Shown here piece after piece: positions 28,876 to 64,000 of a stretch of DNA of 64,000 nucleotides. The stretch is taken from the NCBI GenBank assembly GCA_965637545.1, contig OZ281501.1:15562001-15626000 (forward strand), written 5' to 3'. Each line of letters opens with the position of its first letter. Position 1 is the first letter of the stretch. A program made the position numbers and the translations under genes. The notes under the pieces are model-generated. The model worked only from the letters and a program-made list of their open reading frames with translations, had not been told where the DNA came from and made no database searches. Source of the DNA: Phallusia mammillata. Its lineage: Eukaryota.

Positions 28876-30048
28876 ATTAATAGACAAGCCTACTTTTTGC
28901 GACCAGGCTAGTGAATTTCCGAAAACAGCAAGGTCAGCAAATTAAAAAGAATGTCTAAGACACGAGTTTCGCTCAAAACCAGGGCTTATCAATCGATACA
29001 GATGACTGGCAAATTCGTCGTCTGACTTGAAGTAGAGGAAAAAAGGTACTCGAGTGCCGCTAAAAGTGCGTGTAACTACCTTACAAAAAAGTGTGTACAT
29101 AAAGAGAACCTTTGACATGTAATGTTTGGAGAATTTTTCTAACTACGTTTCCGTTTGGATTTTAGGCCTAAAGCACTGGCGAGCATTTATCTTCTATTGT
29201 TTTACTCCAGCTCAACACTTTTAGCAGTTTTTGCAACATGAGAGAAATTTGTTTATCATTGTTCTTAAAACACCCAATATGTTTTATTGTTATTATAACT
29301 GCAAATTATTTGATTCTGCAGCAGTGTTAGGTCACGGCAATATACCTTTAAAACTAAGCCTTGAGCCTTTGTGAGATGCGCGAAGTATTTTCTACGAGCA
29401 AGGAGTTGCTGGAACAGATTTTGAAAACGTTTGCGTCGTTTTCGTATGCAAATTTTTCGGTTGTCCTTATTTTCGGCTCCGTGTCGAAGGCAACCTATCC
29501 TAAAGCACTGGCGAGCATTTAGCTTCTATTGTTTTTCTCACGTCCAGCATTTTCAGCAATTGTTGCAATGTTAGAGAGTTTTGTTTATCATTGTTGTCTC
29601 GTTTGCAGCAAAAACACCCAGTATGTTTTGTTGTTATCATAACTGCAAAGTATTTGATTCTGAAGCAGTGTTCTGCCACGGCAATATACGTTGAAGAGTT
29701 TCTTGTTTGTCTCATGCAAAGTACTAAAATAACATCGTTTTGACTTGTTTTTGTCGTAAATTTTTATTTCTGATTTTATATAAACTGCGAAATTTTCAGT
29801 GCAGTTTAGAGTCAACGTGCGTTTTCTGAAGTGCTTGATACACGGATTGGGCAACATAAATAACTATCAGCAGGAAATTGTGTTATATGAATGTACAGTT
29901 TTCACAAATCATGAGATAGTTTTTGTTATGTTTGTTCTCCAGAGTGCTGGTTTAAATGCTAGACTTGTCATAAAACATATTTTTGAATAATTCAAAGCAT
30001 TTCGTCACACATCGGTTAGATTTGAATGCAAGAAAATCAGAAGGTTTA

Positions 30049-31443
30049 ATGAAAAACCAAAAAGAAGCAACCCCTTTGATCAACCCGGGCCCAGAAAATG
30101 GTGATGCGAATAAAGAGGTTGTGAAAGCATCTCCTGAAAGATGGGTGATAGTTATTATCATGAGTGTTGTGTCATGCATGCGAAGCTTTGTATTGGCAGC
30201 ATTTGGTCTCAACAACAATGTCATGGCCAAGTACTTTAACGTGGAGCCTTGGCAAATTGACTGGCTTTCTAATGTTCGGGCTTTAACCATGGTTTTGTTT
30301 TGTATACCTCTGTTGTTTATTTTGAGAAGATTCAGTGTGAAAACGTCTATCGTTGCAGTGGTCGGTTGCTCAGCTACAAGTTTAACCCTGGCCAGTTTAG
30401 CAGTTTCATTTCGTCAAGGTTATTTTATCGCCATATTGGGCCAGGTAATGTCCGCTTTCTCCACAACGATCCGGATTCCACTGAAAAGTGCAATCGCTGC
30501 TGTATGGTTTCCAGCCAACGAAATTGCCTACGCTGTCGGTATCATGTTTATAGGAAGGGCTCTTGGAAAAGCTACTGGTGCTGTGGTCGCCTCTCATTTG
30601 GGTTCAATCAGTGATAGTCCATCAATAATCCGAATGCGTTTGTTGGCAGTTTTTGGCTCTTTTGCTATTGCCACATGGACTGTCCTTGTGTTTGTGGTGT
30701 TGTTTATCAAACCACGACCCAAGCATCCTCCAAGCATTGCTCAAGCCAAAGTGCTGCAGTTACAAGAGTTACAAGAAAGCACTAGCCTCAAAGAAGAGCT
30801 AATACAGTTCAAAAATGTACAACTAAAATTGTTGACTAATGTCCACTTTTTGACGGCGTGGTTTGCACGAATTACTATCGACTCAGTTCCACGATTTACA
30901 ACCACTTTGTTATCATCGATATTACAAGCAAACTTTAGCAAAAAAGGAAACACCAGCGTTGACGGAGGCTTTATGATTATGGGACTTTGTCTCATGTCGA
31001 TTGTGGGCAGTTTTTCAGCAGGGCCTTTGCTGAGCATAACTGGACGTTATAAAGCATCGGTAGCTGTGTCTACTGGCCTGGCAAGCGTTTCATGCGTTCT
31101 TGGGATAGCTGGACTCGCCGTTACTTCAACTTCCTTGGTTTATGCAAGCCAAATATTGCTGGGGCTTTTCGTGGGACTTGCATCAGTGAGTGTTACAGAA
31201 CTTATAGTGCAAGTTACTTATCCAACCCGCATTACAGATGCATTTGTGTTCAACGTGATTGGTGTAGGAATCATGTTGGTCGTTCAAACCACTATTGCTA
31301 GATTGTTACTCGAAAAGTTTGGACCTATCGCACCATTTACTCTGGAACTGTTCTGTCTACTGTTAGCAACATGTTTGTTGCCCTTCATGAAGATGCCATT
31401 TTACCGCCAAGAAGCGGCAGCCAGTACCACTGAAAATCAATAA
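30049..31443 (+). CDS. Intronless SLC49/FLVCR-like MFS transporter, subfamily C (464 aa from the first ATG)
   Basis: The track start at 29983 is TTG; the first in-frame ATG is 30049 (MKNQKE). WQIDWL, AAVWFPANEI and PKHPPSIAQA motifs. Confidence 0.9.
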   Translation: MKNQKEATPLINPGPENGDANKEVVKASPERWVIVIIMSVVSCMRSFVLAAFGLNNNVMAKYFNVEPWQIDWLSNVRALTMVLFCIPLLFILRRFSVKTSIVAVVGCSATSLTLASLAVSFRQGYFIAILGQVMSAFSTTIRIPLKSAIAAVWFPANEIAYAVGIMFIGRALGKATGAVVASHLGSISDSPSIIRMRLLAVFGSFAIATWTVLVFVVLFIKPRPKHPPSIAQAKVLQLQELQESTSLKEELIQFKNVQLKLLTNVHFLTAWFARITIDSVPRFTTTLLSSILQANFSKKGNTSVDGGFMIMGLCLMSIVGSFSAGPLLSITGRYKASVAVSTGLASVSCVLGIAGLAVTSTSLVYASQILLGLFVGLASVSVTELIVQVTYPTRITDAFVFNVIGVGIMLVVQTTIARLLLEKFGPIAPFTLELFCLLLATCLLPFMKMPFYRQEAAASTTENQ

Positions 31444-32309
31444 TAAACCTGGAACAAATACAACAATCCAAAAACGTTTACGTTTAAAATGTGTCATGTG
31501 ATTACAGCACAACTATTATTAGCACAACTGTTAACTCTTATTGGAATTCACAAAAAAATATTCTATTTGTTATTTACATGCTCTTACGTACAACACTTTG
31601 CAATAAATATTCCTTTAAAGCATCGTTTTTTAAACGGTTAAGGATTGAGTTATTTTCTGGCAACTCAAATCCTATTTTCTGGTGTCTATTTGAATTTCAG
31701 TAATTTTCTTTGAAAAGGGCCGAGCGAGAAGATTTTTCGGGTCGTATTACTATGATGAAAAAGTCAGTGACACATTCTTCAGCAGAAAAATCAACTATAC
31801 GTTTCATGTGTTTTTTCTTTTATGTTATGTCGTTGCCAAGCTAAATGTCACAGCAAAACATATGTCAAAGACGTGACTGCAATGCTGTCTTCAATACAAG
31901 CAGCAGATAAATGTATAACTTATTAACCCTTGACGTCAGTTTCTTATTCACGAACATACTTGGATGTCTGAGAGGTATTTAGGTTCAGAAATTTAACTAA
32001 AATGACAAAAAGGAAAAAAGACAGTTGTGGGCTTGTTTTGTCACGTTTTCCGGCTTACATCTGCACACAACCAACTCCCGAGATGTCATTGGGTAAAAGT
32101 GCTCAAACACTGCGAGTTGTTGAGTAGTGTCCAGAGAGTTTTTCGCAGGCAATTATGAAACATGTGAGATTTGACAAGAATGATTTTTTGAAGGAACTTT
32201 GTTTAGAACTTAAATGCGTAAATTATAAATTTTCACAATAGGAAGTAAAGAAAATGGATGTGTTTTACCCTTCAGATACTGAATTATATAAAAAAATGGG
32301 GAGACATGG

Positions 32310-32450
32310 CTTTGCAGTATGTTACTCCCAACAAATTGGAGTGTTGACAGAATTAATGCGGCTCATGTCTTGTCACCAACTGGACTGATCAGATCGGTCG
32401 AATTAATGTGCACTGCCTCTACAGTTAACTTATCATCTGTTTTCTCGACG
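32310..32450 (+). repeat. Relic of the HHR repeat monomer upstream of B1
   Basis: GTTACTCCCAACAAATTGGAG..CATGTCTTGTCACCAACTGGA CTGATCA GATCGGTC GAA TTAATGTGCACTG..ACTTATCATCT, shared with the 12.6-16.8 kb monomers. Confidence 0.7.
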
Positions 32451-32541
32451 CTTTTATATCTTTACATATTTAGTTGTCACACTTAAAGTATACCGTTTTT
32501 TAGTTTTGGTTTTACTTAACTAGTGTTGTTTATCAGCAAAT

Positions 32542-33961
32542 ATGGCACATGAATGCGATCTTACGAAATCAACCGCTTCTCCTAATTCACGTCCGGTTAA
32601 CGAAACCAGATCACAGGAAATCAAACCGGTTCCCAGCATATGGTTTGCAGCTATTCTGATGTTTACAGTCAGCTTTTGTAGAGGTTGGGTGTCATCATGC
32701 TACCGCTCAGTAAACGATGTCCTTGCTAAATATTTCCAAGTCCTGCCGTGACAAATACAATAGACTGACTGGTGATCTCACAAGCAGTTGTGTTTGTCCT
32801 TTGTACCGTTCCACTGTCGTTTGTTATGAGCAGTGCTAACTACAGAACCGCATTCATTCTTATGACCTCGTGCCAAGCTGTGGGGGTGCTTCTTGTGAAC
32901 ATGTCATTTTTGTCACAGCAAACTTTCGCCCTGGCAATTGTACGACAATCTGTGTCAGGAGCCAGCAACATCCTTTCACTGATTTGGTTCCCAGCACAGC
33001 CGCTGTATGGTTACAGCCAACGAAATTGACCCAGTCATTTCTTTTTGTATAGTAGGATGGGGACTAGGTGAAGCTTTTGGATCACTACGACTCCACTTTT
33101 AGTGAAAATGGACCAAACGTCGTCCACAATACGGTTCCGTATGCTTATTCTACTCAATTCAGTGGGTTTAGTGCTGGTTATATGTTTAATAGCCGGTATT
33201 AATAGTATTTTTTTCTTAAAAATCGGCCATCTACACCGCCGAGCATAGCACACGCGAAACTGATAAAATATCACGAGACAACGAGGAAAGTAAATTTCAC
33301 GGAACAACTTGTTCGTTTCAAGGATCTAATGTTCAATCTATATACAGACCGTTACTTTCTAACGCTGTGGTCAGTGTATGGCCTAAGTCTTTCAGTTATG
33401 CGAAGTTACACCATTCTTCTTTCCTCTGTTCTGCACAATCAGTTTCAAAAAGCCTCTGGTTTAAACACTAAAGCAGGATTGGTGCTGATGACATCCTGGG
33501 TTATGTCAATATTTGGAAGTTTGGTTGCCGGGCCCTTTGTCACGAAAACTAAAAGATACAAAGCTATAGTAGTAGCCTGTTTGGCCACGCAAACTGGGTT
33601 GTGCATGTAAGGCCTTATAGGTGCTCACTTGTTGAACTTTGCTGTGATTTATTTTGGGATGGCAATACTTGGATTTGTTACTGGTTCAGCGTCTGTTGCT
33701 CTCTATGAATTACTTGCAGAAATTACCTACTCATCCTCCGTTAAACAAGTTACAATGCTGGCCACATTTGGTTTGGGAACAATGACACTATTGTACCCGG
33801 TGATTGGACGTGCGTTGTTGTCACACGTCAGTGCTTCAGCATCCGTCTGTTTTCCGATGATCACGACGTTTATTGCCGTGGTCCTAGTTGCTTCGCAGAC
33901 TCTGCCATTCCATAGGCTAAACGCCGAACAGTCAGAAATGGAACTACTACAGGAAGAATAG
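32542..33961 (+). pseudogene. Subfamily B MFS pseudogene (B1)
   Basis: Colinear with 38931-40343; TGG>TGA at 32749-32751, several frameshifts, TAA at 33608-33610. Confidence 0.9.
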
Positions 33962-34523
33962 TAACTATTTTCAGAATAATGCGAAATAGAGCAATTAATT
34001 GTATTTTAGCTTCTACGGACATGACGCAATTAAATAAAAAATAATTAACACACCGTGTTTGTGTTCTAAACTTTTGCCTCGCTCCGAAGCATCGAAGCTG
34101 TAGCGAGCGCAAGTTATTGGCTGCCACTTTTGCTTCTGCAGGCATTTAACATTCAACAACCTCGAGACGGTTGTATTTGGCCAAACTGTAACCAAGTTTG
34201 TTTGAGTGTTGAAACACAACATTTTTTGTATATATTTTTAAACGTCTTTGCAAAAGTACTCGAGCAAGTTAATGTTTTTGATAGTCAATGTAAAACCACT
34301 TTGCGCATTGTTTAACCACAATACAAAACTACTAAAAACTAAAACAGAGTTGCTTTTAAATAGTTAGCCGATGTCAAAACCCACAATGGAACGGCCAAAA
34401 AGTGTATTTTGAGGCTAAATGTCAAACGAAACCCACGCAACAGCATCAGGATTAGATATGTGGTCACATAACAACGTTTTCCCAAACCTGATACTACTAC
34501 ATGCTGCCCTGACTTGACTGCCC

Positions 34524-34648
34524 TTAGCAGTTTTCCCTGGCAAAGATCCAACTGTGCCAGAAACTCCATTTACTTTTGTATTTGTTGATACATGAACCGA
34601 ATGCTCTATCGCAGTAACACGCGTCTCTGCCCAGTGATGCACCTCTAG
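34524..34648 (-). pseudogene. Orphan last exon of secreted phospholipase A2
   Basis: TTTACCAG acceptor, then RGASLGRDACYCDRAFGSCINKYKSKWSFWHSWIFARENC*; 125 nt like exon 4 at 40712-40836; upstream exons absent. Confidence 0.85.
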
Positions 34649-34714
34649 CTGGTAAAGCATGAAAGTTAAAATTGGTTTGCAACCATTTTATTCTTGCTTG
34701 TAATTTGTCTAGGG

Positions 34715-35270
34715 CAGTGGTTCTCAACCTTTTTTCTTTCGTGGCCCATTTGTATTGCTCAAATTCTGTGGCCCAGTAAATTTTTAAGAAAGAAAAAACC
34801 ACTATAAAATAGGTTCAGAAAAAAAGCAGAACATATTTTAAACAGATTATAAGTTTAAAATAACTTAAAAAAAATGCATAAAACAGCATTTTCCTTTCTT
34901 TAATCAAGCGCTTTTAATTATGACCAGAGTAATTGGACAATGGATATGCTGCTATCTGGCTTTATTGTAATCACAAAGTAGTTTATTATTACATCTTAAA
35001 CATAAAGTGTTGCAGAAACTGAAAGTAACTTTATACTGTAAATAGATCAATTCAAATTAATTTACGTCCCTTCTCAATTTCTCCCCAAGCCATTATTTTT
35101 TCAAAATTGAGTGTAGTGACACAAATCAAAATATTTAAAAAAAAAAAGCTTTCTATTAGATTGGTCTGTGGCCCAATCAAAATGCTTTCTGTGAGATTGG
35201 TCTGTGGCCCAATCATGGAATATTTCCAATGTCTCCCATTCAACATATACGACTGTGGTTCTCAACTAAT
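34715..35270. mobile_element. Partial hAT-type MITE
   Basis: Left TIR CAGTGGTTCTCAACC; right end and TSD not resolved, so the end coordinate is approximate. Confidence 0.45.
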
Positions 35271-36200
35271 CGCGTACCATCCGACAACTTTGTCTATTGC
35301 TGCGTACGACCTGAACCCTGTTTGAATGAGTAAATTAAAGATAAACCTACTTTTCGCGACCAGGCTAGCATATTTCCGAAACCAGCAAGGTTAGCAAGTT
35401 CAAAAGAATGTCCAAGGCATGAGTTTCGCCCTAAACCAGGGGTGCAGATCACTTGCAAATTCGTGGTCTCACTTGAAGTAGGACAAAAAGATACTCGAGT
35501 ACCACGTACCACTAATAATACGCGCACCATAGGTTAAACTGACTTAGTGTCACTACCAAGTAAACCTTTGACATAAAATATTTGGAGAATTTTCATCACT
35601 ACGTTGACCTAGTGTTGATTTTTGGGCCTAAAACACTGGCGAGCATTTATTTTCTATTGTTTTCCTCAAGCTCAGCACTTTTAACAATTTTGGCCACGTA
35701 AGAGAAGTTTGTTTATTATTGTTCTCCCGTTTGCCGCAAAACACCCAGTATGTTTTTTGTTATTATAACTGCAAAGTATTTAAATCTTCGGCAGTAGTGT
35801 TCTGTCACGGCAATATACGTTGCAGAGTTTCTTGTGTGGCTCATGCAAAGCACTTGAATATTTTAACATCGTTTAGACTTGTTTTTGTCGTAATTTTTGA
35901 TTTCTGATTTTTTATAAACCGCGAAATTTTCAGTGCGGTTCAAAGTCAACATGCATTTTCTGAAATGCTTGATACGCGATACATGATACACAGAGATAAC
36001 TTCCAACAGGAAATTGTGTCATTTGCATGTACAGTTTTCTGAAATCATAAGAAAGTTTGTGTTATGTTTGTTCTCTAGACTGCTGGTTTAGGTATCAGCG
36101 GTTAGCAATGCTAGACTTGCCATAAAACATATTTTTGAATAATTCAAAGCATATCGGTTAGGTTGGGTAACGTTTAAATGCAAGAAATTCAGAAGGTTTA

Positions 36201-37599
36201 ATGAAAAACCAAAAAGAAACAACCCCTTTGATCAACCCGAGCCCAGAAAACGATGATGCAAGAGGAGGCCCAAATGGGAATGAAGAAGTTGTGCTTCTCC
36301 CGAACGATGGGTGATATAGTTATCATCATGAGTGTCGTGCATGCGAAGCTTTGTATCGGCAACATTTGGTCTCACCAATAATGTCATGGCCAAGTACTTT
36401 AATGTGGAGCCTTGGCAAATTGACTGGCTTTCGAATGTTCGGACTTTTACGATGGTTTTGTTTTGCATACCTCTGTTGTTTATATTGAGAAGATTCAGCG
36501 TGAAAACGTCTATCGTTGTATTGGTCGCATGCTCAGCTGCAAGTTTCACCCTGACCAGTTTGGCAGTTTCATTTCGTCAAGGTTATTTTATCGCCATATT
36601 TGGCCAGGTAATGTCTACTTTTTCCACAACGATCCGGATTCCACTGAAAAGTGCAATCGCTGCTGTATGGTTTCCAGCCAACGAAATCGCCTACGCTGTC
36701 GGTATCATGTTTATAGGAAGGGCTCTTGGAAAAGCTACTGGTGCTGTGGTCGCCTCTCATCTGGGTTCAATCAGTGATAGTCCATCAATAATCCGAATGC
36801 GTTTGTTGGCAGTGTTTGGGTCATTCGCTGCTGTCACATGGGCTGTCCTCGTTGTGTTGTTTATCAAACCACGACCCAAGCACCCTCCAAGCATTGCTCA
36901 AGCCAAAGTTTTGCAGTTACAAGAGTTACAAGAAAGCACTAGCCTCAAAGAAGAGCTAATAAAGTTCAAAAACGTGCAACTAAAACTGTTGACCCAGTTC
37001 ACTTTTTAACAGCGTGGTTTGCAAGAATTACTATCGACCCAGTTCCACGATCCACAACGACTTTGTTATCATCTATACTACAAGCAAACTTCAGCAAGAA
37101 CGGAAATACCAACGTAGACGGAGGCTTTATGATCATGGGCCTTTGGCTCATGTCGATTGTGGGTAGTTTTTCAGCAGGACCTTTGCTAAGCAGAACTGGA
37201 CGTTATAAAGCATCGGTAGTTGTGTCTACCGCCCTGGCAAGCGTTTCTTGCGTTCTTGGTATAGCTGGACTCGCAATTACTTCAATTTCCATGGTTTATG
37301 CCAGCCAAATATTGCTGGGGCTTTTCGTGGGACTTGCATCAGTGAGTGTTACAGAACTGATAGTGCAAGTTACTTATCCAACCCGCATTACAGATGCATT
37401 TGTGTTCAACGTGATTGGTTTAGGAATCATGTTGGTCATTCAAACTACAATTGCTAGATTGTTACTCGAGAAGTTGGGACCTATCACAGCATTTGCTCTA
37501 GAACTGTTGTATCTACTGTTACCAACATGTCTGTTGCCCTTCATAAAGATGCCATTTTACCGCCAAGAAGCAGAAGCCAGTACCACTGAAAATCAATAA
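36201..37599 (+). pseudogene. Subfamily C MFS pseudogene (C2)
   Basis: Colinear with 30049-31443; ATG at 36201; frameshifts at ~36260-36335 and ~36995-37010. Confidence 0.9.
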
Positions 37600-37733
37600 T
37601 AAACCTGTTGACAGTGACTTTGATTTATTGAGTAATTTGATTTGCGTTTTATTTTTAAGCTATGTCGTGGCCACGCTAAATGTCACAAATGTCACAGCAA
37701 AACATATGTGAATTATTTCTCCTCTAAGACGTG

Positions 37734-38307
37734 TAGTGATCGATTTATGTTAATGGTGGCTAATGAGTCTTAAGGTTATAACCGCATCACTACAAATAAA
37801 GAGGTATACCACCGTTCTTAACCCCCAAGCTCCTGAGCTTGTCAGGACCTAGACCTGAAAACTTCACACAAGTGTCTAGCACTTCGTTTCGTTTGTTGAT
37901 AACTTCTGAAAGCAACAAGAAGGGAAAGGGAAAGAGAACGAAATGAACCACTGCGGTTGATGTATTCCCCGGATAAAGGCGTTAAATCGTACACATGTGC
38001 TCTTGCGATTGGCTCTTGCACAAATTCTCACACAAAGCAGCGTCCAATCATATCACGGGACAAAACATACGATATAGCGCATCCGGTATTTTATAAAAGC
38101 TCGCAAACAACAGATAAAAAAGTCGCATCTGCATCCTAATAAACTGCGACAGGAAATATTGCTAAGTCCGAACATGATTTTTCAATACAGTTGGATTTGG
38201 TTGCTACACATTTTAACTTCCTCGCAAGCTTTATGCTAGCGAGTCAAAACGAGCTATTTTGGTAAACAACTATTGCGAAGTTTGCTCAAATTATGTCGCA
38301 ATCGCTA
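37734..38307. mobile_element. Non-autonomous insertion, probably hAT-type
   Basis: Absent from the paralogous intergenic region (~52140-52160); short imperfect TIR TAGTGATCG / CAATCGCTA; TSD AAGACGTG / CAGACGTG. Confidence 0.6.
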
Positions 38308-38674
38308 CAGACGTGACTCCATTACAGTCTACAAATAAAAAACACACAAAAAAACAGAAGATATCTGTGCATTGTTTTTTTTTCAGTTTCTTATTCACGT
38401 ACATCCTTATCTGGAAACCTATAGTGGTTCAGCAATTTAGCTAAAATGACAAGAGGACAAAAAGACAGTTGTGAGGTTGTTTTGTCACGTTTTCCGGCTC
38501 ACATCTGCATGCAAGCAACTCCCGAGATGTCATTGGGTAACAGTTCTCGAACACTGCGAGTTGTTGAGGAGTGTCCAGAGAGTTTTTCGCAGGCAACATG
38601 TTAGATTTGACGAGAATGATTTTTTTAAAGTAACTTAGCTGAGAACTTTAGCTACTGAAGACCAAAACTATGTG

Positions 38675-38830
38675 GCATGGTACAGATGGTGAGGCATGTC
38701 TTTGCAGTATGTTACTCCCAACAAACTGGAGTGCTGATCGAGCCAATGCGGCTCATGTCTTGTCACCAACTGCACTGATCAGATAGGGCGAATCAATATG
38801 CACTGCGTCTACACCCAACTTATCATTTGT
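38675..38830 (+). repeat. Relic of the HHR repeat monomer upstream of B2
   Basis: GGTGAGGCAT..GTTACTCCCAACAAACTGGAG..CATGTCTTGTCACC AACTGCA CTGATCA GATAGGGC GAA TCAATATGCACTGC..ACTTATCAT. Confidence 0.7.
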
Positions 38831-38930
38831 TTGCTCGACGCTTTTATATTTTTACATTATAGTTGTCACAATTAAAGTATGTGCTTTTTTAGTTTTGGTT
38901 TTACTTATTTGGTAATGTTTATCAGCAAAT

Positions 38931-40343: not shown

Positions 40344-40711
40344 CACTTTTTAGATCAACTTTGACACCCTTGTATTTGGCCACCATTGGCTGTTTTATGT
40401 TACACTTTTATTAATTTCAACATTTTGCTGCTTTATGAGTGTTGGTACACAACAGTTTTTGCATATATGTTATCGTTTCTTGAAAATGTACTGGAATAAG
40501 TGAATGTTTTTATGTTTTTAATAGTCAACCTTTGTTGTTGAAACCACTTTACGCATTGTTTTACCACAATACAAAACTACTAAATACTAACACAGAGTAA
40601 TTCAAAACCCACGTAACAGCATCACGATTTTAATGGAACAGGATATGGTCACAAAACAACGTTTTCCCAAACCGGATACCACAACATGCTGCCCCGATTT
40701 GACTGCCCTAT

Positions 40712-52621: not shown

Positions 52622-54028
52622 TTATTGATCCTCAATGGTACTGGCTTCTGCTTCTTGGCGGTGAAATGGCATCTTTATGAAGGGCAACAAACATATTGGT
52701 AACAGTAGATAAAACAATTCCACAGCAAATGCTGCGATGGGTCCAAACTTTTCGAGTAACAATCTAGCAATAGTGGTTTGAATAAGCAACATGATTCCTA
52801 AACCAATCACGTTAAACACGAATGCATCTGTAATGCGGGTTGGATAAGTAACTTGCACTATCAGTTCTGTAACACTCATTAATGCAAGTCCCACGAAAAG
52901 ACCCACCAATATTTGGCTTCCATAAACCAAGGAAATGGAGTTAATGGCGAGACCAGCTATCCCAATAAAGCAAGAAACGCTTGCCAGGTCAGTAGACACA
53001 ACTACCGATGCTTTGTAACGTCCAGTTATGCTTAGCAAAGGTCCTGCTGAAAAACTGCCCACAATCGACATGAGCCAAAGACCCATGATCATGTATCCAC
53101 CGTCAACGTTGGTATTTCCGTTCTTGCTAAAGTTTGCTTGTAATATCGATGATAACAAAGTGGTTATGGACCGTGGAATTGGGTCGACAGTATTTCTTGC
53201 AAACCACGCGGTTAAAAAGTGTACGTTGGTCAACAATTTTAGTTGCACATTTTTGAACTTTGTTAGCACTTTTTTGAAACTAGTGCTATCTTGTAAATCT
53301 TGTAACTGCAAAACTTTGGCTTGAGCAATGCTTGGAGGGTGCTTGGGTCGTGGTTTGATGAACAACACAACAAACACAAGGATAACCCATGTGACAATAG
53401 CAAATGAACCAAACACTGCCAACAAACGCATTCGGATTATTGATGAATTACCAGTGACTGAAACCAAATTAGGGGCGACCACAGCACCAGTAGCTTTTCC
53501 AAGGGCCCTTCCTACAAACATGATACTGACAGCGTAAGCAATTTCGTTTGCTGGAAACCATACAGCAGCGATTGCGCTTTTCAGTGGAATCCGGATCGTT
53601 GTGGAGAAAGCAGATATTAACTGGCCAAATATGGCGATAGAATCACCTTGACGAAATGAAACTGCTAAACTGGCCAGGGTTAGACTTGGAGATGAGCATG
53701 CGACCATTGCAACGATAGACGTTTTCACACTGAATTTTCTCAAAATAAACAACAGAGGTATGCAAAACAAAACCATGGTTAAAGCGCGAACATTAGAAAG
53801 CCAGTCAATTTGCCAAGGCTCCGCGTTGAAGTACTTGGCCATGACATTGTTGGTGAGACAAAATGCTGTCGACACAAAGCTTCGCATGCAAGACACAACA
53901 CTCATGATGATAACTATCACCCATCTTTCAGGAGAAGATTTTACAGCCTCTTTATTTGCATTTTGGCCTTCTCTTGCATCACTACTTTCTGGGTTGATCA
54001 AATGAGTTGTTTCTTTTTGTTGTTTCAT
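52622..54028 (-). CDS. Intronless SLC49/FLVCR-like MFS transporter, subfamily C (468 aa from MKQQKE)
   Basis: Intact ORF; ATG at 54028. Carries non-conservative changes (GYF>GDS, STG>STD in a TM segment) that might indicate early decay. Confidence 0.85.
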   Translation of the reverse strand: MKQQKETTHLINPESSDAREGQNANKEAVKSSPERWVIVIIMSVVSCMRSFVSTAFCLTNNVMAKYFNAEPWQIDWLSNVRALTMVLFCIPLLFILRKFSVKTSIVAMVACSSPSLTLASLAVSFRQGDSIAIFGQLISAFSTTIRIPLKSAIAAVWFPANEIAYAVSIMFVGRALGKATGAVVAPNLVSVTGNSSIIRMRLLAVFGSFAIVTWVILVFVVLFIKPRPKHPPSIAQAKVLQLQDLQDSTSFKKVLTKFKNVQLKLLTNVHFLTAWFARNTVDPIPRSITTLLSSILQANFSKNGNTNVDGGYMIMGLWLMSIVGSFSAGPLLSITGRYKASVVVSTDLASVSCFIGIAGLAINSISLVYGSQILVGLFVGLALMSVTELIVQVTYPTRITDAFVFNVIGLGIMLLIQTTIARLLLEKFGPIAAFAVELFYLLLPICLLPFIKMPFHRQEAEASTIEDQ

Positions 54029-54748
54029 TAAACCGTCTGATTTTCTTGCATTCAAAAGTTACCCAACCTAACCGATGTGTCACAAAATGCTTTGAATTAT
54101 TCAAAAATATGTCTAATGGCAAGTCTAGTATTACAAACCGCTAACAATGAGCCAGCACTCTGGAGAACAAACATAACACAAACTTTCGAAAACTGTACAT
54201 GCAAATAACACTAATCCCTGCTGGAAGTTTTCCATTTTGCCTAATCCATACATCAAGCATTTCAAAAAAATGCATGTTGGCTCCAAACCGCAATTAAAAT
54301 TTCGCGGTTTACACAAAATCAGAAATTAAAAGTTACGACAAAAACATGCAATTTTGAAATACTTATAAGTACTTTGCACGAGCCAAGCAAAAAACTCTTC
54401 AACATATATTGTCGTGTCAGAACACCGCTGCATAAGCAAGTGCTTTGCAGTTATAATAACAACAAAACATGTTGGGTGATTTGCCGCAAACAGGAAAACA
54501 ATGACAAACAAATTTCTCTTGCATTTCAAAATTTGTTAAAAGTGCTGGACGGGAGGAAAACAAGAGAAGATAAATGCTCGCCAGTGCTTTAAATATGTTT
54601 ACCATCGACACGGAGCTGAAAATGAAGACAACCGAAAAATTAAGTTTCCACAGGAAATGAAACAAATGTCTTAAAATAAATGGTTGCTTTTATATGAGTC
54701 ATGACATGTCACATGCTATATTGTTTGCCAGAAACAATCTGTTCCAGC

Positions 54749-56266: not shown

Positions 56267-56449
56267 CTAAAGTGACTCGACTTGAGTCGGGTTACTAATA
56301 AAGCTTCGCATGCATGACACAACACACATGATGATAACTGTCACCCATTTTTTAGGAGAAACTTGTATATTAGTATTTTGGCCTCCTCTTGCATCACCAT
56401 TTTCCGTGACCTGGTTGATCAAAGTGATAGTTTCTGTATTATTTTGCAT
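56267..56449 (-). pseudogene. 5' fragment of a subfamily C MFS gene with its upstream region (to ~56720)
   Basis: MQNNTET..VSPKKWVTVIIMCVVSCMRSF matches the C-type N-terminus, then homology stops. Confidence 0.8.
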
Positions 56450-56919
56450 TTAACCTTCTGTCAGTTTGCACTCAAACGTTACCTAACTTATCCAATATGT
56501 CACAACATCCTTTGATGAAAGCTAAATGATGTCGTATAAGTCTAGTATTACAAACCGCTAACAGTAAACCAGTACACCAGATGAAAAACCAACCAACTAA
56601 CACAAACTTTCTTATGTTTTCGGAAAACTGCAAATGCCAACAACACAATTTCCTGTTAGTTTTTATGTATGTTTCCATGTCAGTATTTGAAACACAGAAA
56701 ATGCATGTTGACTCTAAGCTTCCGTTCAAAGTTTGCGGTTTGTATTGAAGCAGTTACGTGCTTTCAAATCTTCATTTTGGCACTTTGGTTTAGCTCATCG
56801 TCAAGCAATTTTAAGTTTGCAAGCATGTCTTTTTGTTTCCATGGAAATTATACCTTGTTTTTGCGGCATATGGTATTCCGCGTTGTATCTTTACTGTTGC
56901 ATGTGTTTTCATGATTCAT

Positions 56920-59348
56920 GATTCCATTAATACCCACCAAGGACTTTTTCGTTACAACCGCCTAGTGTTTGGTTTAGCTTTAGCCCCAGCGTTATGGCAA
57001 AAGGCTATGGATCAAGTACTGCAAGGTTTGAAAGGGGTACAATGTTTATTAGATAATATGATAATCACTGGAACAACAGATGTAGAACATAAAGAAAATC
57101 TTAGGAATGTTCTCAAGCGACTGTCGGGGCATGGCTTGGAAGTAAATCGGAACAAGTGTGAGTTTTAAGGACCAAATCGAATTTTGTGGTCATGTGGTGG
57201 ATAAAGAGGGATCGCATAAATCCCACCATAAAATTAGGGCAGTGACGAGTTGTCCAACCCCACAGAATGTGTCCCAGCTACGTTCGTTTCTTGACTTAGT
57301 TAATTATTATCATCGATTTTTGCCCAATCTGTCAACCCTTTTACATCCGTTATGTGAACTTTTAGAGAAAGGTCGTGAATGGAACTGGTCCTTGGAATGC
57401 GCTCAGTCATTTGACAAAGCTCGTAAACTTATGGCTTCTGATAAGGTTCTTACACATTATGATGTAAATTTGCCAATTAAGTTAGCATGTGATGCATCGC
57501 CGTACGGTATTGGAGCAGTTATGTCGCATGTAATGCCGGAAGGCAGTGAACGACCCATTGCTTACATCTCGAGATCTCTGTCAAAGTCCGAGAAAAACTA
57601 TTTGCAAATTGATAAAGAAGCTTTAGCTATTGTGTGAGCTGTACAAAAGTTTCACATTTATTTGTTTGGTCGACATTCTACGCTTGTGACAGACCATAAG
57701 CCTCTTACTTCTATATTTCATCAAAAAAAGCATTCCTGTAATGTCGGCACAACGTTTGCAACGTTATGCTTTAATTTTGTCCGCTCATAATTATTCGATA
57801 GAATACCGCACTGCAACTCAACATGGAAATGCTGATGGTTTGTCTAGATTGCCCCAATGCTCCACTGAGACTTCGTCCGATGTTGCGAGCAGTTTTTATT
57901 TCAAGCAGATTGCCTTTTTTGCTGTAACGGCTGATGAGATTGCCAATCACACACGCTCGGACAAGACTTTGTCACGGGTGTTTGCTTGCGTGACATCGGG
58001 CAATTGGGTGCAGGAAAGTGACATCATGCCGTATTATTATCGAAGAAACGAGTTATCAACATATTAAGGATGTTTGGTTTGGGGACCCAGGGTGGTTATT
58101 CCAGAAAGTTTAAAACCTTCCATTTTGCAGGAATTACACAACCGACACCTGGGTGTTGTGAAGATGAAACAAATCGCTCCAAATTATGTCTGGTGGCCAA
58201 ACCTCGATAAGCACATCGAGGAATTGTCTAAAAACTGTTCGGGGCGTTTACAAAACAGAAACGCACCAGCCATCGTAAAATACCACCCGTGGCAAACATG
58301 TGTTAAACCATGGCAACGCATTCACTTAGATTTTGCAGGTCCTGTTGAAAACCACATGCTCTTGGTGATCGTGGATGCTTATTCTAAGTGGCCAGAAGTA
58401 ATCCCGATGCGTTCGACCACGGCGGCTGCAACCATGGACGAACTTTGCAACGTTTTCTCAAGGAACGGTATTCCTGAAAAAATGGTTTCAGACAACTGTC
58501 CTCAATTTATTTCACAGGAGTTCGAGACGTTCGTAAAGATGAACGGTATTCGTCATTCCAAGACTACTCCTTACTCTCCAGCCACTAACGGCCAAGCGGA
58601 GAGATTTGTACAAACTGTCAAGAGAGGTTTACAATCTATGGCAAACGATCCTGGAACCCTAAAAAGCAAACTTTCAAGATGTTTGTTGTCCTATCGCAAT
58701 GCTCCCCATGCATTGTTAGGGGAGTCCCCCGCCAAGCTGTTCCTCAAGCGCAATTGTAGAACACGGCTAGATCTGGTTCAACCCACGGGAGAAGAAAGGG
58801 TTGAGAATTGTATAGAAAAGCACATCGACAGGCACCACGTGCAGTCACCACGAACATTTGAAGTTGGTCAAAAAGTGGCAGCCTTAGACTATCGTGCTCG
58901 CAGTAAACGTTGGGCGATTGGTGTCATACAAAAAGTTCTCGGGTCTCTGACCTATCTTGTACGTATAAACTGCAAATTTATTTGGAAGCGTCACACTAAT
59001 CAGTTAATTGACATGTCGGAAAATAATGTTCGTGGCAATGTAAATGTAATTCGCCGTGTTTTGATGATTTTGTTTTTGATAACCGTTCCAACATGTCGAA
59101 CGATTCTTATACTCGTTACCCCACGAGAACCCGACAACCGCCAACCAGATATGGGTTTGAGAATTAGAATTTGTTTGTAGTGAGGAGTGTTATATATTTG
59201 TGTTTATTCGTGCGTGTCTTGTATCACCACGTGTGTTCGCTTAAGCGTAACGACCGCTTTATAAGCTCGTGCTTTGCCCTAGAGGTCATTACAAGTATTT
59301 ACGCGAGGAGTGCGCTTTATGCAGTTGAAGGACTTGAGGTTAAACACA
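56920..59348 (+). mobile_element. 5'-truncated Ty3/Gypsy LTR retrotransposon (RT C-terminus, RNase H, integrase, 3' LTR), degenerate
   Basis: GLFRYNRLVFGL..WQKAMD (YLDD>LLDN), LACDASPYGIGAV..ERPIAY..EALAIV, H-X3-H/WWP zinc-binding region, DFAGP..SDN..AERFV. Stops and frameshifts. Purine tract GTAGTGAGGAG, then TGTT...CACA (59188-59348) as the likely LTR. Confidence 0.9.
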
Positions 59349-60264
59349 TTGTTTATTTGCTCTTACGTACAACACTATGCTCGCAACGTTTCTTTTACGG
59401 TTAAGGATTGAGTTATTCTTTCGCAATATCCTTTTGAATGTAAGTGTAATGTCATAGCAGACTACAAGAATCAGCCTGTGTGACAGGGCGGTGACCGACG
59501 GATCTGTCTACACTTATCAGATATATTCAAATAGAATAGAATTCGATTCTATTTGAATAAGACGGAAACTGACGATGCCCAAATAGGCGAAATTAATATT
59601 TCTGTTTTTCAAAAATAAAACATTACACTGACGCTGATCGTCTGCTGCTCTTTTTGAGTACATTTTGTATATATCCTTTTGAATTTCACTAATTTTTTCC
59701 AAAAAACGGCCGGACGAGAAGCTTTTTCGGGTCGGAATCAAAGGATGAAAAATACATTGACGCTTTCTTCAGCAGTAAAATCATGTTACGAATCAAATAC
59801 AACTATAAACGTTTACTGCATTTGATTTTAAAAGCTATTTCGTGGACACGCAAAATGTCACAGCAAAAATGAGATAAACGTCACAGCAGAAAATAAATGC
59901 GTATTAGCTCTTGACGTCAGGATGTCTAAGAGGTATTTAGGTTCTGAAGTTTAACTAAAATGACAAAGGACAAAAAGACAGATGTGTGGTTGTTTTGTCA
60001 CGTTTTCGTGATTACATCTGCACGCAACCAACTCCCAAAAAACTAATACGTAACAGTTCCATTTTGGTTAACACTGAATGTTGTTGTTTAGTTTCCAGAG
60101 AGTATTTTGCAGGCAATTATGAAACATGTGAGATTTGACAAGAATGTGTTTTTTATTTGTTTGCTCGAAGCTTATATGTCTTACTCTACATTTTTTTTGT
60201 AACAGTTAAAGTATGCCGTTTTTTAGTTTTGGGTTTACTTAACTGGCATTGTTTATTAGCAAAG

Positions 60265-61674
60265 ATGGCAAATGAGTGCAATCTTACGGAATCAACCGCT
60301 TCTCTTATTTCACGCCAAGTTGAAGAAATCAGTGGACAGGAAATCAAATCGTATTCGAGCAGATGGTTTGCAGCTGTTCTGATGTTTACACTCAGTTTTT
60401 CTAGAGGCTGGGTGGCATCATGCTACCCCTCAGTAAACGATGTCCTTGCTGCATATTTCCAAGTCCTGCCATGGCAAATAGACTGGTTGTTGATCTCACA
60501 AGCAGTTGTGTTTGTCCTTTGCACAGTTCCGCTTTCGTTTCTTATGAGCAGTGCAAAGTATAGAACCGCATTCATTCTTATGACCTCGTGTCAAGCTATG
60601 GGGGTGCTTCTTGTGGACCTGGCTTTTTTGACAAGACATACTTTTGCCTTGGCAATTGTAGGACAATCTGTGTCAGCTGCCAGTAACATCCTTGCAATGT
60701 CTTTGGTTCCCAGCACAGCCGCTGTATGGTTTCCAGCCGATGAAATTGGCCCAGTCATTTCTTTTTGTACAGTAGGATGGGGACTAGGTGAAGCTTTTGG
60801 ATCACTAACGACTCCACATTTAGTGAAAATGGACCAAACGTCGTCCACAGTAAGGTTCCGTATGCTTCTTCTACTTGGTTCAGTTGGGTTAGTCCTGATT
60901 ATATGTTTAATAGCAGAAGTATTTTTTCTCAAAAGCCGGCCCCCTACACCGCCGAGCAAAGCCCAAGCGATGCTGATAAAGCATCAAGAAACAGCGCAGA
61001 ACGTAAGTTTCACGGAACAACTTGTTCGTTTCAAGGATCTAATGTTGAATCTATATACCAACCGTCAATTTCTAACGCTGTGGTTAGTGTATGGCCTTTC
61101 TGTTCCAGTTATGCGAAGTTACACCGTTCTTTTTTCCTCCATTCTGCACAATCAGTTTCAAAAAGCCTCTGGTTTAAACACTAAAGCGGGATTGGTGCTG
61201 ATGACATCCTGGGTTATGTCAATATTTGGAAGTTTGGTCGCTGGACCCGTAGTCACGAAAACTAAAAGATACAAAGCTATAGTAGTAGCCTGTTTGGCCA
61301 CACAAACTGTGTCGTGTATGTTAGGTCTTATAGGTGCTGAATTGTCGAATTTTGCTGTGATTTATGCTGGGATGGCAATACTTGGATTTGTTACTGGTTC
61401 AGCGGCTGTTGCTCTCTATGAATTACTCGTAGAAATTACCTACCCCTCATCCGTTAAACAAGTTTCAATGTTGACGATGATTGGTTTGGGAATAATGACA
61501 CTTTTGTACCCAGTGATCGGACGAGCGTTGTTGTCATACGTCAATGCTTCAGCATCCATCTGTTTTCCGATAATTACAACATTTATTGCCGTGGTTTTAG
61601 TTGCTTCGCAGAATCTGTCATTTCATAGGCTAAATGCCGAACAGTCAGAAATGGAAGTACTACTTGAAAAGTAG
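60265..61674 (+). CDS. Intronless SLC49/FLVCR-like MFS transporter, subfamily B (B4, 469 aa from MANECNL)
   Basis: Intact ORF; the paralog-conserved ATG is at 60265. Confidence 0.9.
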   Translation: MANECNLTESTASLISRQVEEISGQEIKSYSSRWFAAVLMFTLSFSRGWVASCYPSVNDVLAAYFQVLPWQIDWLLISQAVVFVLCTVPLSFLMSSAKYRTAFILMTSCQAMGVLLVDLAFLTRHTFALAIVGQSVSAASNILAMSLVPSTAAVWFPADEIGPVISFCTVGWGLGEAFGSLTTPHLVKMDQTSSTVRFRMLLLLGSVGLVLIICLIAEVFFLKSRPPTPPSKAQAMLIKHQETAQNVSFTEQLVRFKDLMLNLYTNRQFLTLWLVYGLSVPVMRSYTVLFSSILHNQFQKASGLNTKAGLVLMTSWVMSIFGSLVAGPVVTKTKRYKAIVVACLATQTVSCMLGLIGAELSNFAVIYAGMAILGFVTGSAAVALYELLVEITYPSSVKQVSMLTMIGLGIMTLLYPVIGRALLSYVNASASICFPIITTFIAVVLVASQNLSFHRLNAEQSEMEVLLEK

Positions 61675-62058
61675 TTTTTAGATTAGCGCGACAAGAAGCA
61701 ATTAATATTATTTTTGCTTTGCTTTTTCGGACATGATGCAATTAAAAATAGCAAATAGCACATTGTGTTTTGTGCTTTAAACTTTTGCTTCGCTCCGAAG
61801 CAACGAAGCTTTAGCAAGCTGAAGTGATTGGCTGCCACTTTTGCTTCTGTAGTCGTTTAAAATTGACATCCTTGTCTTTGCCCACCCTTGGCTGTTTTAT
61901 GTTGCACTTAGCTTAGTTTTTGCTGCTTTATCATAGTTCCACAATCTGGAAATGGACAAATAGGTGTGATAATACAACTTTTTCGCTTATATGTGGACGT
62001 TAGAATAATTGACGAAGCAACAGTGCTTCCTAATCAAAATCAGTCAACAAAGTTGTTT

Positions 62059-62099
62059 AACGATATATATTTCACCCCAAAAGGGCATCTTCAGTCGTT
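62059..62099 (-). ncRNA. Minimal Penelope-type type I hammerhead ribozyme
   Basis: Minus strand AACGA CTGAAGA T GCCCT-TTT-GGGGT GAA ATATAT A TCGTT: stem I AACGA/TCGTT, palindromic stem III, AUA triplet. Confidence 0.8.
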
Positions 62100-63434
62100 C
62101 TGTGAAACAACGGGTGTAAAAGTAAAACAAAACAAGCAATGAACTAAATCCATATCAAACACACCAAAAAATTACAACAACCTGCTACAAGCCCTTGCTA
62201 ACTATGCAAGATCTGCGACAGAACTGCATCTAAGCTACACGAAGAGCTAACACTACAACAAGCGATAAGGGAACAGTGCGCACCCATATAGAAAGAAGGA
62301 AAAGGAGAGAGACGAGATAACCGTCTAGTCCAGGGGCAACGAAAGAACTCTAGAGTGGACACAAACAAACAACCCAGTTCAAATGGAATTACCAAATAAA
62401 ATCGATAAAAACCAGTAAAAAAAAAAATTTTTTAAATAATAAAATATAGTTATCGCACTCTGGGCAAAACCATTTTTTGAATATTGATAGTAGCTTGGGT
62501 AATTTTAAGCCACTTTGCTTCGCAAGCGTCCAAATCTTTAGAAGGCGGCTGCTGTAAAAACGTGACATAAAACACACTCGGCAATGACGGGATAGGTGGC
62601 GAAGAGTTCAGGGTGTTTAACTGCGTAATGGCGCAACAGCGCTGCATTATCGTTACCTTCTTTAATATCATGTTCTTTCCATACCGATCTATGGTGGTTC
62701 CATCGGGTGCTAAACCGGTTTTTTGTTTGGCCGATGTATTGTTCTTTACACATACGGCATGTGGCCGCATACACACCATAGTTTTTGCAGTCCAGCACCT
62801 GTTTTAATCTAATATCTTTGCCGCGTGTGGCAAAATTACACCACCATAGATCGGTATGGAAAGAACATGATATTAAAGAAGGTAACGATAATGCAGCGCT
62901 GTTGCGCCATTACGCAGTTAAACACCCTGAACTCTTCGCCACCTATCCCGACATTGCCGAGTGTGTTTTATGTCACGTTTTTACAGCAGCCGCCTTCTAA
63001 AGACTTGGACGCTTGCGAAGCAAAGTGGCTTAAAATTACCCAAGCTACTATCAATATTCAAAAAATGGTTTTGCCCAGCGTGCGATAACTATATTTTATT
63101 ATTTTATTTATTTTTTTACTGTTTTTTATCGATTTTATTTGGTAATTCCATTTGAACTGGGTTGTTTGTTTGTGTCCACTCTAGAGTTCTTTCGTTGCCC
63201 CTAGACTAGACGGTTATCTCGTCTCTCTCCTTTTCCTTCTTTCTATATGGGTGAGCACTGTTCCCTTATCGCTTGTTGTAGTGTTAGCTCTTCGTGTAGC
63301 TTAGATGCAGTTCTGTCGCAGATCTTGCATAGTTAGCAAGGGCTTGTAGCAGGTTGTTGTAATTTTTTGGTGTGTTTGATATGGATTTAGTTCATTGCTT
63401 GTTTTGTTTTACTTTTACACCCGTTGTTTCACAG

Positions 63435-63475
63435 AACGACTGAAGATGCCCTTTTGAGGTGAAACATATATCGTT
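63435..63475 (+). ncRNA. Minimal Penelope-type type I hammerhead ribozyme (second arm)
   Basis: AACGA CTGAAGA TGCCCTTTTGAGGT GAA ACATAT A TCGTT; two substitutions weaken stems II and III. Confidence 0.72.
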
Positions 63476-63957
63476 AAACAACTTTGTTGACTGATTTTGA
63501 TTAGGAAGCACTGTTGCTTCGTCAATTATTCTTACAAAAAATTTACTTATAATCAGTGATCGTCGAAAAAAAATATTTAACAAAAAAAATAAAAAAATAA
63601 AAAAAAATAAAAAAAAATATGCCTACTACTTGCGGGATAGATCCTGTACCAAACACTAAATATGTGGACGTTTGGAGTATTGAGATAAATGAATGTTTAT
63701 TGTTTCTGTGTTAGTCAGCATTGTTTTCTGTTGATACAACTTTGCGCATATTTGTACAACAATGCGAAAAAACTGCTAAATGTCCATACCGAATTGCTTT
63801 CAAACTGTTAGCACAAGCAAAAAGTGTATTTCGAGGCTCAATGTCAACCAAAGGAACACGCAATAACATCACGTTTTTAATGGAGCTGGATATGTGGTCA
63901 CAAAAGAACGTTTTCCCAAACCGGATACCACAACATGCTGCCCTGACTAGATTGCCC

Positions 63958-64000
63958 TTAGCAGTTTTCTCTGGCAAAGATTCAGCTGTGCCAGAAACTT
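63958..64000 (-). pseudogene. End of PLA2 last exon of a fourth cassette (continues beyond the window)
   Basis: Reverse complement SFWHS*IFARENC*: TGG>TGA relative to the other copies. Confidence 0.75.

What the first reader, a model, noticed from the sequence alone, without database searches (positions are those of the whole stretch)
29100..64000. Repeated three-gene cassette: MFS-C > MFS-B > convergent secreted PLA2
The same order and intergenic sequence recur four times (30.0-34.7, 36.2-42.2, inverted 47.2-54.0 and 59.3-64+ kb). A phospholipid hydrolase co-amplified with relatives of choline/ethanolamine transporters could form a lipid-digestion, uptake or defence module (inference). Passive co-duplication is the null, supported by three of four PLA2 copies being damaged.
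Basis: partly seen in the sequence, partly recalled or inferred. Interest (0 to 1): 0.7.

Follow-up and report, generated by a model that had tools for sequence, protein, structure and literature searches.

The report
Transporter gene array dragging a phospholipase along
A repeated block of two membrane-transporter genes and a secreted phospholipase A2 gene is real, but it looks like ordinary copy-and-decay of a tandem gene array in a tunicate genome, with the phospholipase carried along as a neighbour, not a purpose-built lipid module.

Summary
The repeat is real. A block of about 6.5 kb, MFS-C > MFS-B > convergent PLA2, recurs at 82-94% identity. One detail is wrong: the fourth in-window copy has no MFS-C. 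A fifth, inverted copy lies 16 kb past the window, and it is the only one with all three genes intact.

The MFS genes are intronless relatives of FLVCR/SLC49 transporters. The genome, a tunicate by its CesA-GH6 loci, has at least 93 matches to them. They lack the residues that bind choline in human FLVCR2.

The PLA2 is a four-exon, conventional secreted type. It has exactly five copies genome-wide, all in this array. Two are intact (dN/dS 0.18). One is frameshifted and has lost its start codon. Two are 3' stumps cut at rearrangement junctions.

Passive co-duplication fits best:
- PLA2 ends 370-600 bp from MFS-B.
- The stumps keep only the end nearest MFS-B.
- A recent 2.5-kb conversion tract homogenises MFS-B and stops short of PLA2.
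- A different cassette (C > C > < A) is duplicated in the same array.
- None of the seven other PLA2 loci has an MFS gene within 10 kb.

Synteny in other species and co-expression could not be tested.

The parts
20205..21611 (+). MFS-A copy (A20), intact intronless FLVCR/SLC49-like gene; first array member in the window
25663..27078 (+). MFS-A copy (A25), intact; tandem duplicate of A20 (90% nt, dS 0.22, dN/dS 0.42)
28398..28969 (-). Relic of the 3' end of an MFS-C gene, opposite orientation, abutting the left edge of unit 1
29451..34715 (+). Cassette unit 1 (C1 intact, B1 pseudogene, PLA2 exon-4 stump)
29983..31443 (+). MFS-C1, open frame intact
32542..33975 (+). MFS-B1 pseudogene: six frameshifting indels and in-frame stops relative to B2
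34524..34648 (-). PLA2 exon 4 only. Homology to the other copies ends about 65 nt into intron 3 (34715), at the junction between units 1 and 2, so this copy was truncated when it was made
35255..42300 (+). Cassette unit 2 (C2 broken, B2 intact, PLA2 intact)
36260..37599 (+). MFS-C2, broken by frameshifts (for example a 1-nt deletion near 36997) and split into two ORFs
38931..40343 (+). MFS-B2, intact, 470 aa
40712..42198 (-). Intact secreted PLA2, four exons, all introns GT-AG, 181 codons: e1 42198-42118 (signal peptide), e2 42046-41838 (calcium loop YGCWCGFGG), e3 41435-41305 (CCKAHDVC), e4 40836-40712 (CYCD...stop)
44425..45936 (+). Divergent MFS-C copy (Cs44), intact. It lies between the inverted units 2 and 3 and was co-duplicated with unit 3/5 (44608-47300 is 85% identical to L002:3677-6336)
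47173..49436 (+). PLA2 pseudogene of unit 3: ATA where the start codon should be, a 4-nt deletion early in exon 2, G to V in the calcium loop, first Cys of the CC pair changed to Y; exons 3-4 otherwise open
50030..51439 (-). MFS-B3, intact
50150..52700 (.). Recent conversion or recombination tract shared with unit 5 (p-distance 0.00-0.03, against 0.08-0.28 on both sides). It covers the 3' end of C, the C-B spacer and the whole of MFS-B, and ends about 100 bp before the MFS-B stop codon, so PLA2 is outside it
52622..54055 (-). MFS-C3, intact
56300..56741 (-). 5' fragment of an MFS-C gene with its upstream region, most like the copy at L003:4615-5235
56815..59180 (+). Decayed gypsy-like retrotransposon pol (RT, RNase H, integrase) split into several ORFs, sitting where unit 4's MFS-C would be
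59349..64000 (+). Cassette unit 4, incomplete: C-B spacer, B4, inserted element, PLA2 stump that runs past the window end
60157..61674 (+). MFS-B4, intact
61999..63535 (.). Near-perfect palindrome (97.9% arms) with a GIY-YIG-like ORF, a Penelope-like insertion between B4 and the PLA2 stump
63958..64000 (-). PLA2 stump of unit 4. Exon 4 (continues to L001:90) has a 2-nt insertion. Only the last 57 nt of exon 3 remain (L001:370-426). Homology then switches at L001:428 to sequence found downstream of the MFS-A genes

Best explanation
This is an array of roughly 84 kb evolving by birth and death. It holds intronless FLVCR/SLC49-like transporter genes of subtypes A, B and C in a tunicate genome. 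It grew by nested direct and inverted segmental duplications and is reshaped by gene conversion, transposon insertion and pseudogenisation. A single conventional secreted PLA2 gene lay tail-to-tail 370-600 bp from the ancestral MFS-B gene. Every duplication that took a whole MFS-B gene therefore also took at least the 3' end of PLA2. Where the breakpoint fell beyond PLA2, a full copy was made (units 2, 3 and 5). Where it fell inside PLA2, a stump was made that was dead from the start (units 1 and 4). PLA2 is a real, selected gene with two intact copies, but its amplification follows from its position, not from a functional coupling. Shown: the anatomy, the copy states, the selection on coding sequence, the mosaic history and the lack of linkage elsewhere in the genome. 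Inferred: the order of events and the absence of functional coupling.
For: 1. All five genomic copies of this PLA2 lie in the array, each next to an MFS-B gene. The stop-to-stop distance is 368-593 bp.
2. Retention falls off from the MFS-B side. All five units keep exon 4, four keep part or all of exon 3, and three keep exons 1-2. Homology in unit 1 ends in intron 3, exactly at the unit 1/unit 2 junction, as expected when a breakpoint of a tandem duplication lies inside the gene. Unit 4 switches inside exon 3 to unrelated array sequence.
3. Intactness is scattered. Only unit 5 has C, B and PLA2 all intact. C is broken in unit 2, B in unit 1, and PLA2 in units 1, 3 and 4.
4. The history is mosaic. 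Units 3 and 5 differ by 0-3% across the C-B spacer and MFS-B, but by 7-28% in PLA2 and 5-19% in C. B3-B5 dS is 0.065 against 0.22 for their PLA2 copies.
5. C genes duplicate independently. C5 is closest to C92 and C100 (dS 0.12), which have no PLA2. A different cassette, C > C > < A, is duplicated with a period of about 7.76 kb at dS 0.01-0.05.
6. The unit 3/5 duplication includes a fourth gene.
7. None of the seven other PLA2 loci has an MFS match within 10 kb either side, and none of the other MFS clusters lies near a PLA2 hit.
8. The genes converge, so they cannot share a promoter (read from the sequence).
Against: - Two PLA2 copies have stayed intact under purifying selection (dN/dS 0.18, dS 0.29), so duplication of PLA2 was at least tolerated and may have been useful.
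- All five B-type genes in the genome have a PLA2 or a PLA2 relic beside them. This is also what a co-selected pair would show.
Confidence: 0.8

Rival explanations
1. Functional module: the B-type transporter and the secreted PLA2 act together (for example PLA2 releases a lipid product that MFS-B imports or exports), and the pair was amplified by selection for dosage in digestion or defence.
For: The pair is adjacent in all five units. Two PLA2 copies (dN/dS 0.18) and four B copies (dN/dS 0.10-0.35) are intact and constrained. The family-level link between FLVCR transporters and phospholipid head groups is real (PMC11168923).
Against: - Only one of five units has all three genes intact.
- Two PLA2 copies were truncated at the moment of duplication.
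- The latest homogenisation covers B and stops about 100 bp before the B stop codon, so PLA2 is outside it.
- There is no MFS-PLA2 linkage at seven other PLA2 loci or at the other MFS clusters.
- The choline-binding residues W102, Q191, F324, Y325 and Q447 of FLVCR2 are A, N, M, R, I in B2 and S, T, R, S, G in C3 (PMC11168923).
- PLA2 releases fatty acid and lysophospholipid, not choline (established enzymology).
- The genes converge, so they have separate promoters.
Confidence: 0.1
2. Assembly artefact: the copies are allelic haplotypes or collapsed repeats wrongly laid out in tandem.
For: Units 3 and 5 are almost identical over 2.5 kb. The window has no gaps, so nothing marks a join.
Against: Copies differ by 8-25% outside that tract. 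They have different orientations, different indels and pseudogenising lesions, different transposon insertions and different flanks. Haplotypes would not show this.
Confidence: 0.03
3. The cassette is cargo of a mobile element that spreads it.
For: Transposons are frequent in the window: a gypsy-like pol and a Penelope-like palindrome, and the DNA transposons named in earlier scan notes.
Against: The PLA2 block and its 1.1-kb upstream spacer occur only inside this one array and nowhere else in 240 Mb. Unit ends differ from copy to copy, and no terminal repeats bound them.
Confidence: 0.03

Closest known systems
Birth-and-death evolution of tandem gene arrays by segmental duplication, non-allelic recombination and gene conversion, with bystander genes co-duplicated
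   Same: Nested direct and inverted duplicates at dS 0.01-0.7. There is a mix of intact, constrained copies (dN/dS 0.1-0.45) and pseudogenes. A discrete conversion tract is present. An unrelated neighbouring gene is copied whole or in part, depending on where the breakpoints fell.
   Different: Nothing in kind. The particular pairing of SLC49-like transporters with a secreted PLA2 has not, as far as my literature searches show, been described.
FLVCR1/FLVCR2 (SLC49A1/A2), human choline and ethanolamine transporters
   Same: MFS fold. They are the best solved-structure matches over nearly the full length (E 1e-20 to 1e-30).
   Different: Only about 25-30% identical, and intronless. There are at least 93 matches in this genome, against a handful of SLC49 genes in vertebrates (the vertebrate figure is from my own knowledge). 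All five choline-coordinating residues are replaced, and the Tyr325 position is Arg in B2, which is unfavourable for a cationic substrate (inference).
Conventional (group I/II/V/X type) secreted phospholipase A2, Pfam PF00068
   Same: Signal peptide, calcium loop Y-G-C-W-C-G-F-G-G, active-site CCxxHD with His and Asp, the C-x-C-D motif, and a Cys in the N-terminal helix as in group I. The exon break falls just before the CC motif.
   Different: Leu at the position of Tyr52. It has 12 cysteines instead of 14, and by my reading of the positions the Cys61-Cys91 pair is absent. An acidic stretch of about 30 residues lies between the signal peptide and the N-terminal helix.

Membership tests
SLC49 / FLVCR-type MFS transporters | MFS fold over the full length | tested here: met
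   Pfam MFS_1 at E 1e-16 to 1e-23, covering most of the profile, in every intact copy
SLC49 / FLVCR-type MFS transporters | Closest characterised relatives are FLVCR1/2 | tested here: met
   FLVCR2 and FLVCR1 are the top five PDB matches for A, B and C (E 1e-20 to 1e-30). The next family, GLUT3, scores E 1e-4 over a fragment only
SLC49 / FLVCR-type MFS transporters | Choline/ethanolamine site: W102, Q191, F324, Y325, Q447 (FLVCR2 numbering, PMC11168923) | tested here: not met
   The aligned residues are A, N, M, R, I in B2 and S, T, R, S, G in C3. The alignment around 324/325 in C3 lies next to an 8-residue insertion and is less certain. Family membership stands, but a choline-transporter function is not supported
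Conventional secreted PLA2 (PF00068) | Calcium-binding loop Y-G-C-x-C-G-x-G-G | tested here: met
   YGCWCGFGG in exon 2 of units 2 and 5. Exon 2 matches PF00068 positions 16-40 and PDB PLA2s
Conventional secreted PLA2 (PF00068) | Catalytic His48-Asp49 in CCxxHDxC, and Asp99 in CxCD | tested here: met
   CCKAHDVC in exon 3 and CYCD in exon 4 of units 2 and 5
Conventional secreted PLA2 (PF00068) | Tyr52 of the catalytic network | tested here: not met
   Leu follows HDVC in all copies. From my own knowledge, Tyr52 substitutions in pancreatic PLA2 keep activity, so this does not by itself predict an inactive enzyme
Conventional secreted PLA2 (PF00068) | Whole-protein score above the Pfam cut-off (32.1 bits) | tested here: inconclusive
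   Exons were searched apart, by reference: 26.7 bits for exon 2 and 15.4 bits for exon 3, each below the cut-off on its own.
Co-selected functional gene cluster | The same linkage recurs at independent loci or in other species | tested here: not met
   Within this genome, no MFS gene lies within 10 kb either side of seven other PLA2 loci, and no PLA2 hit lies near the other MFS clusters. Other species could not be tested: no close relatives are in the databases. The one 38%-identical homologue on a 12-kb contig has no PLA2 exon in its 700 bp of downstream sequence
Co-selected functional gene cluster | Members are retained and evolve together | tested here: not met
   One of five units is fully intact. 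The conversion tract covers B and not PLA2. C copies are related across cassette types
Co-selected functional gene cluster | Co-expression | not testable with these tools
   No expression data were available

The most novel reading that the evidence does not exclude
The tail-to-tail pair of a B-type SLC49 transporter and a secreted PLA2 is a lineage-specific functional couple in a tunicate. For example, the transporter, whose pocket has lost the choline cage and gained an Arg, could carry an anionic PLA2 product such as a fatty acid or a lysolipid. On this reading, the two fully or nearly intact units (2 and 5) are kept for that reason.
Probability: 0.07. Interest if true: 0.5.

Novelty: new member of a known kind. 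Interest (0 to 1): 0.25.

Why it matters
The main value is as a clean negative: a striking repeated 'cassette' that could be taken for a functional module is explained by gene position and duplication breakpoints.

Two side points may interest tunicate biologists:
- This genome has a very large, young expansion of intronless SLC49/FLVCR-like transporters (at least 93 matches). Their substrate pocket differs from that of the human choline transporters, so their substrates are unknown.
- A lineage-specific secreted PLA2 has two selected copies.

Neither point changes a general principle.

Tried and rejected
- **Close relatives for synteny.** The word search with MFS-B found only three proteins, at 35-38% identity. 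Only one lies on a usable contig (12 kb), which shows no PLA2.
- **PLA2 word search.** The search with PLA2 exon 2 found no candidates. This says little, because the tool only sees proteins of 38-121 aa for that query.
- **Joined PLA2 protein.** It was not searched or folded. Exons were searched apart by reference, and dN/dS was summed exon by exon without joining.
- **Literature.** Searches for FLVCR in ascidians, secreted PLA2 in Ciona and SLC49 expansions found nothing relevant.
- **Poly(A) signals.** A scan for poly(A) hexamers between the B and PLA2 stop codons gave no consistent pattern, so whether the 3' UTRs overlap is undecided.
- **Mobile-element cargo and assembly artefact.** Both were considered and rejected.
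- **Broken copies.** The broken PLA2 and MFS copies were only described. No repaired or consensus version was made.
- **Human sequence.** Nothing in the window looked human.
Full report
**Setting**

The window is G000:C8:15562001-15626000 of a 240-Mb eukaryotic genome. Two loci carry a cellulose-synthase GT2 domain followed about 3 kb downstream, on the same strand, by a GH6 domain. From my own knowledge of the family, that fusion is the hallmark of tunicate cellulose synthase, so I take the genome to be a tunicate. The window has no N runs and nothing in it looked human.

**Is the repeat real?**

Yes. Self-BLASTN aligns:
- 29451-34136 to 54641-49860, inverted, at 82% over 4.9 kb;
- 29499-31451 to 35627-37607 at 87%;
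- 31936-33975 to 38383-40354 at 86%;
- 38309-40349 to 52150-50024 at 85%;
- 38825-40341 to 60155-61675 at 89%.

A five-way alignment shows 85-94% identity in the genes and about 80% in most spacers.

The long ORFs are MFS_1 proteins, and their best solved-structure relatives are FLVCR2 and FLVCR1 (E 1e-20 to 1e-30). There are three subtypes:
- **A:** 20205-21611 and 25663-27078.
- **C:** 29983-31443, 36260-37599, 44425-45936 and 52622-54055.
- **B:** 32542-33975, 38931-40343, 50030-51439 and 60157-61674.

**The PLA2 gene**

In unit 2 the minus strand holds a four-exon gene at 40712-42198. All introns are GT-AG and the exon lengths sum to 546 nt.
- Exon 1 encodes a signal-peptide-like start.
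- Exon 2 encodes YGCWCGFGG. It matches PF00068 at 26.7 bits, and its best PDB matches are PLA2 chains.
- Exon 3 encodes CCKAHDVC.
- Exon 4 encodes CYCD and the stop codon.

The exons were searched apart, by reference.

The protein has Leu where Tyr52 normally sits. It has 12 cysteines instead of 14.

**All PLA2 copies**

A DNA search of the whole genome finds this PLA2 block only in this array, five times. Their states are as follows:

| Unit | Position | State |
|---|---|---|
| 1 | 34524-34648 | Exon 4 only; homology stops at 34715, in intron 3, at the junction with unit 2 |
| 2 | 40712-42198 | Intact |
| 3 | 47173-49436 | ATA in place of the start codon, a 4-nt deletion early in exon 2, a Gly to Val change in the calcium loop, and the first Cys of the CC pair changed to Tyr |
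| 4 | 63958 to L001:426 | Exon 4 with a 2-nt insertion and only the last 57 nt of exon 3; the sequence then switches to a stretch otherwise found downstream of the A genes |
| 5 | L002:6209-7488, outside the window | Intact |

Units 2 and 5 differ by dS 0.29 and dN 0.05, giving dN/dS of 0.18. The gene is therefore real and constrained.

**Other members**

- B1 has six frameshifting indels and in-frame stops, and C2 has frameshifts.
- Unit 4 lacks C. A decayed gypsy-like pol (56815-59180) lies in its place. A Penelope-like palindrome (61999-63535) separates B4 from the PLA2 stump.
- Only unit 5 has all three genes intact.
- Intact MFS copies are under purifying selection. For B, dN/dS is 0.10-0.35 at dS 0.065-0.215. 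For C, dN/dS is 0.25-0.45.

**Why passive co-duplication**

1. PLA2 ends 368-593 bp from the B stop codon, tail to tail. Any segment that includes a complete B gene is therefore likely to include part of PLA2.
2. Retention of PLA2 falls off from the B-proximal end. Exon 4 is present in 5 of 5 units, exon 3 in 4 of 5 (one partial), and exons 1-2 in 3 of 5. Unit 1 is what a tandem duplication produces when one of its breakpoints lies in PLA2 intron 3: one copy gets only the 3' stump and the other keeps the whole gene.
3. The units do not evolve as units. Between units 3 and 5, a 2.5-kb tract (50150-52700) covering the C-B spacer and the whole B gene is 97-100% identical. PLA2 on one side and most of C on the other are 5-28% diverged. 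B3-B5 dS is 0.065, against 0.22 for their PLA2 copies.
4. The block is not fixed. The unit 3/5 duplication extends across a fourth gene: 44608-47300 is 85% identical to L002:3677-6336. C5 is closest to C copies that have no PLA2 beside them.
5. Further along the same array, another cassette, C > C > < A, is duplicated with a period of about 7.76 kb at dS 0.01-0.05. Cassette-wise copying is thus the habit of this locus whatever the gene content.
6. Linkage is unique to this locus. The genome has at least seven other PLA2 loci and at least 93 FLVCR-like matches in many clusters. No MFS match lies within 10 kb either side of any other PLA2 locus.
7. The genes converge, so they do not share a promoter.

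**The choline link**

Human FLVCR2 binds choline with W102, Q191, F324, Y325 and Q447 (PMC11168923). In the alignments, chain numbering equals native numbering, since W102 falls at index 102. B2 has A, N, M, R, I at these positions and C3 has S, T, R, S, G. The genes belong to the SLC49 family, but the choline site is not kept. PLA2 in any case releases fatty acid and lysophospholipid, not choline (established enzymology).

**What remains open**

- Two intact, constrained PLA2 copies show that the duplication was tolerated and possibly useful.
- Every B gene has a PLA2 or a PLA2 relic beside it, which a co-selected pair would also show.
The protein databases hold no close relatives, and the single homologous contig is uninformative.
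- I put the functional-pair reading at about 0.07-0.1.

**Verdict**

The repeat is an ordinary tandem-array duplication with a bystander gene, and it is of low to moderate interest.

Noticed in passing
L003:5065-L005:276 (array beyond the window, C8:15651065-15666276): A different three-gene cassette, MFS-C > MFS-C > < MFS-A, is tandemly duplicated with a period of about 7.76 kb and very low divergence (dS 0.012-0.046).
   Followed up: partly
Whole genome G000 (for example C4:25.51-25.63 Mb, C4:21.43-21.47 Mb, C4:9.71-9.83 Mb, C2:14.89-14.92 Mb, C1:11.49-11.71 Mb): There are at least 93 matches to intronless FLVCR/SLC49-like genes, mostly in clusters. This is a large lineage expansion, and the copies examined here lack the choline-binding residues of human FLVCR2.
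   Followed up: partly
G000:C3:28480812-28484297 and C6:17808396-17813236: Two loci have a cellulose-synthase GT2 domain followed by a GH6 domain on the same strand. This is the tunicate CesA signature and points to two CesA genes.
   Followed up: partly
G000:C1:17.015-17.018 Mb and C1:18.898-18.902 Mb: These are the closest paralogues of the array PLA2 (exon 2 up to 61% identical). Each locus holds a tandem pair, and neither has an MFS gene within 10 kb.
   Followed up: partly
L001:3185-3845, L001:6562-8866, L002:70-3363: Three satellite arrays lie between unit 4 and unit 5. One has a period of about 195 bp at 91-94% identity. One is a complex repeat of about 65/130 bp spanning 3.3 kb that also gives weak inverted self-matches.
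   Followed up: no
window 56815-59180: A decayed gypsy-like pol (RT, RNase H, integrase) is split into at least four ORFs. It was only observed.
   Followed up: partly
window 61999-63535: A palindrome with 97.9% identical arms contains a GIY-YIG-like ORF, consistent with the earlier scan note of a Penelope-like element.
   Followed up: partly
window 42558-43683 and L001:1745-2825: A 1.1-kb spacer upstream of the unit 2 PLA2 has one other full copy (82%) in the genome, also inside the array. It is not a dispersed repeat.
   Followed up: yes
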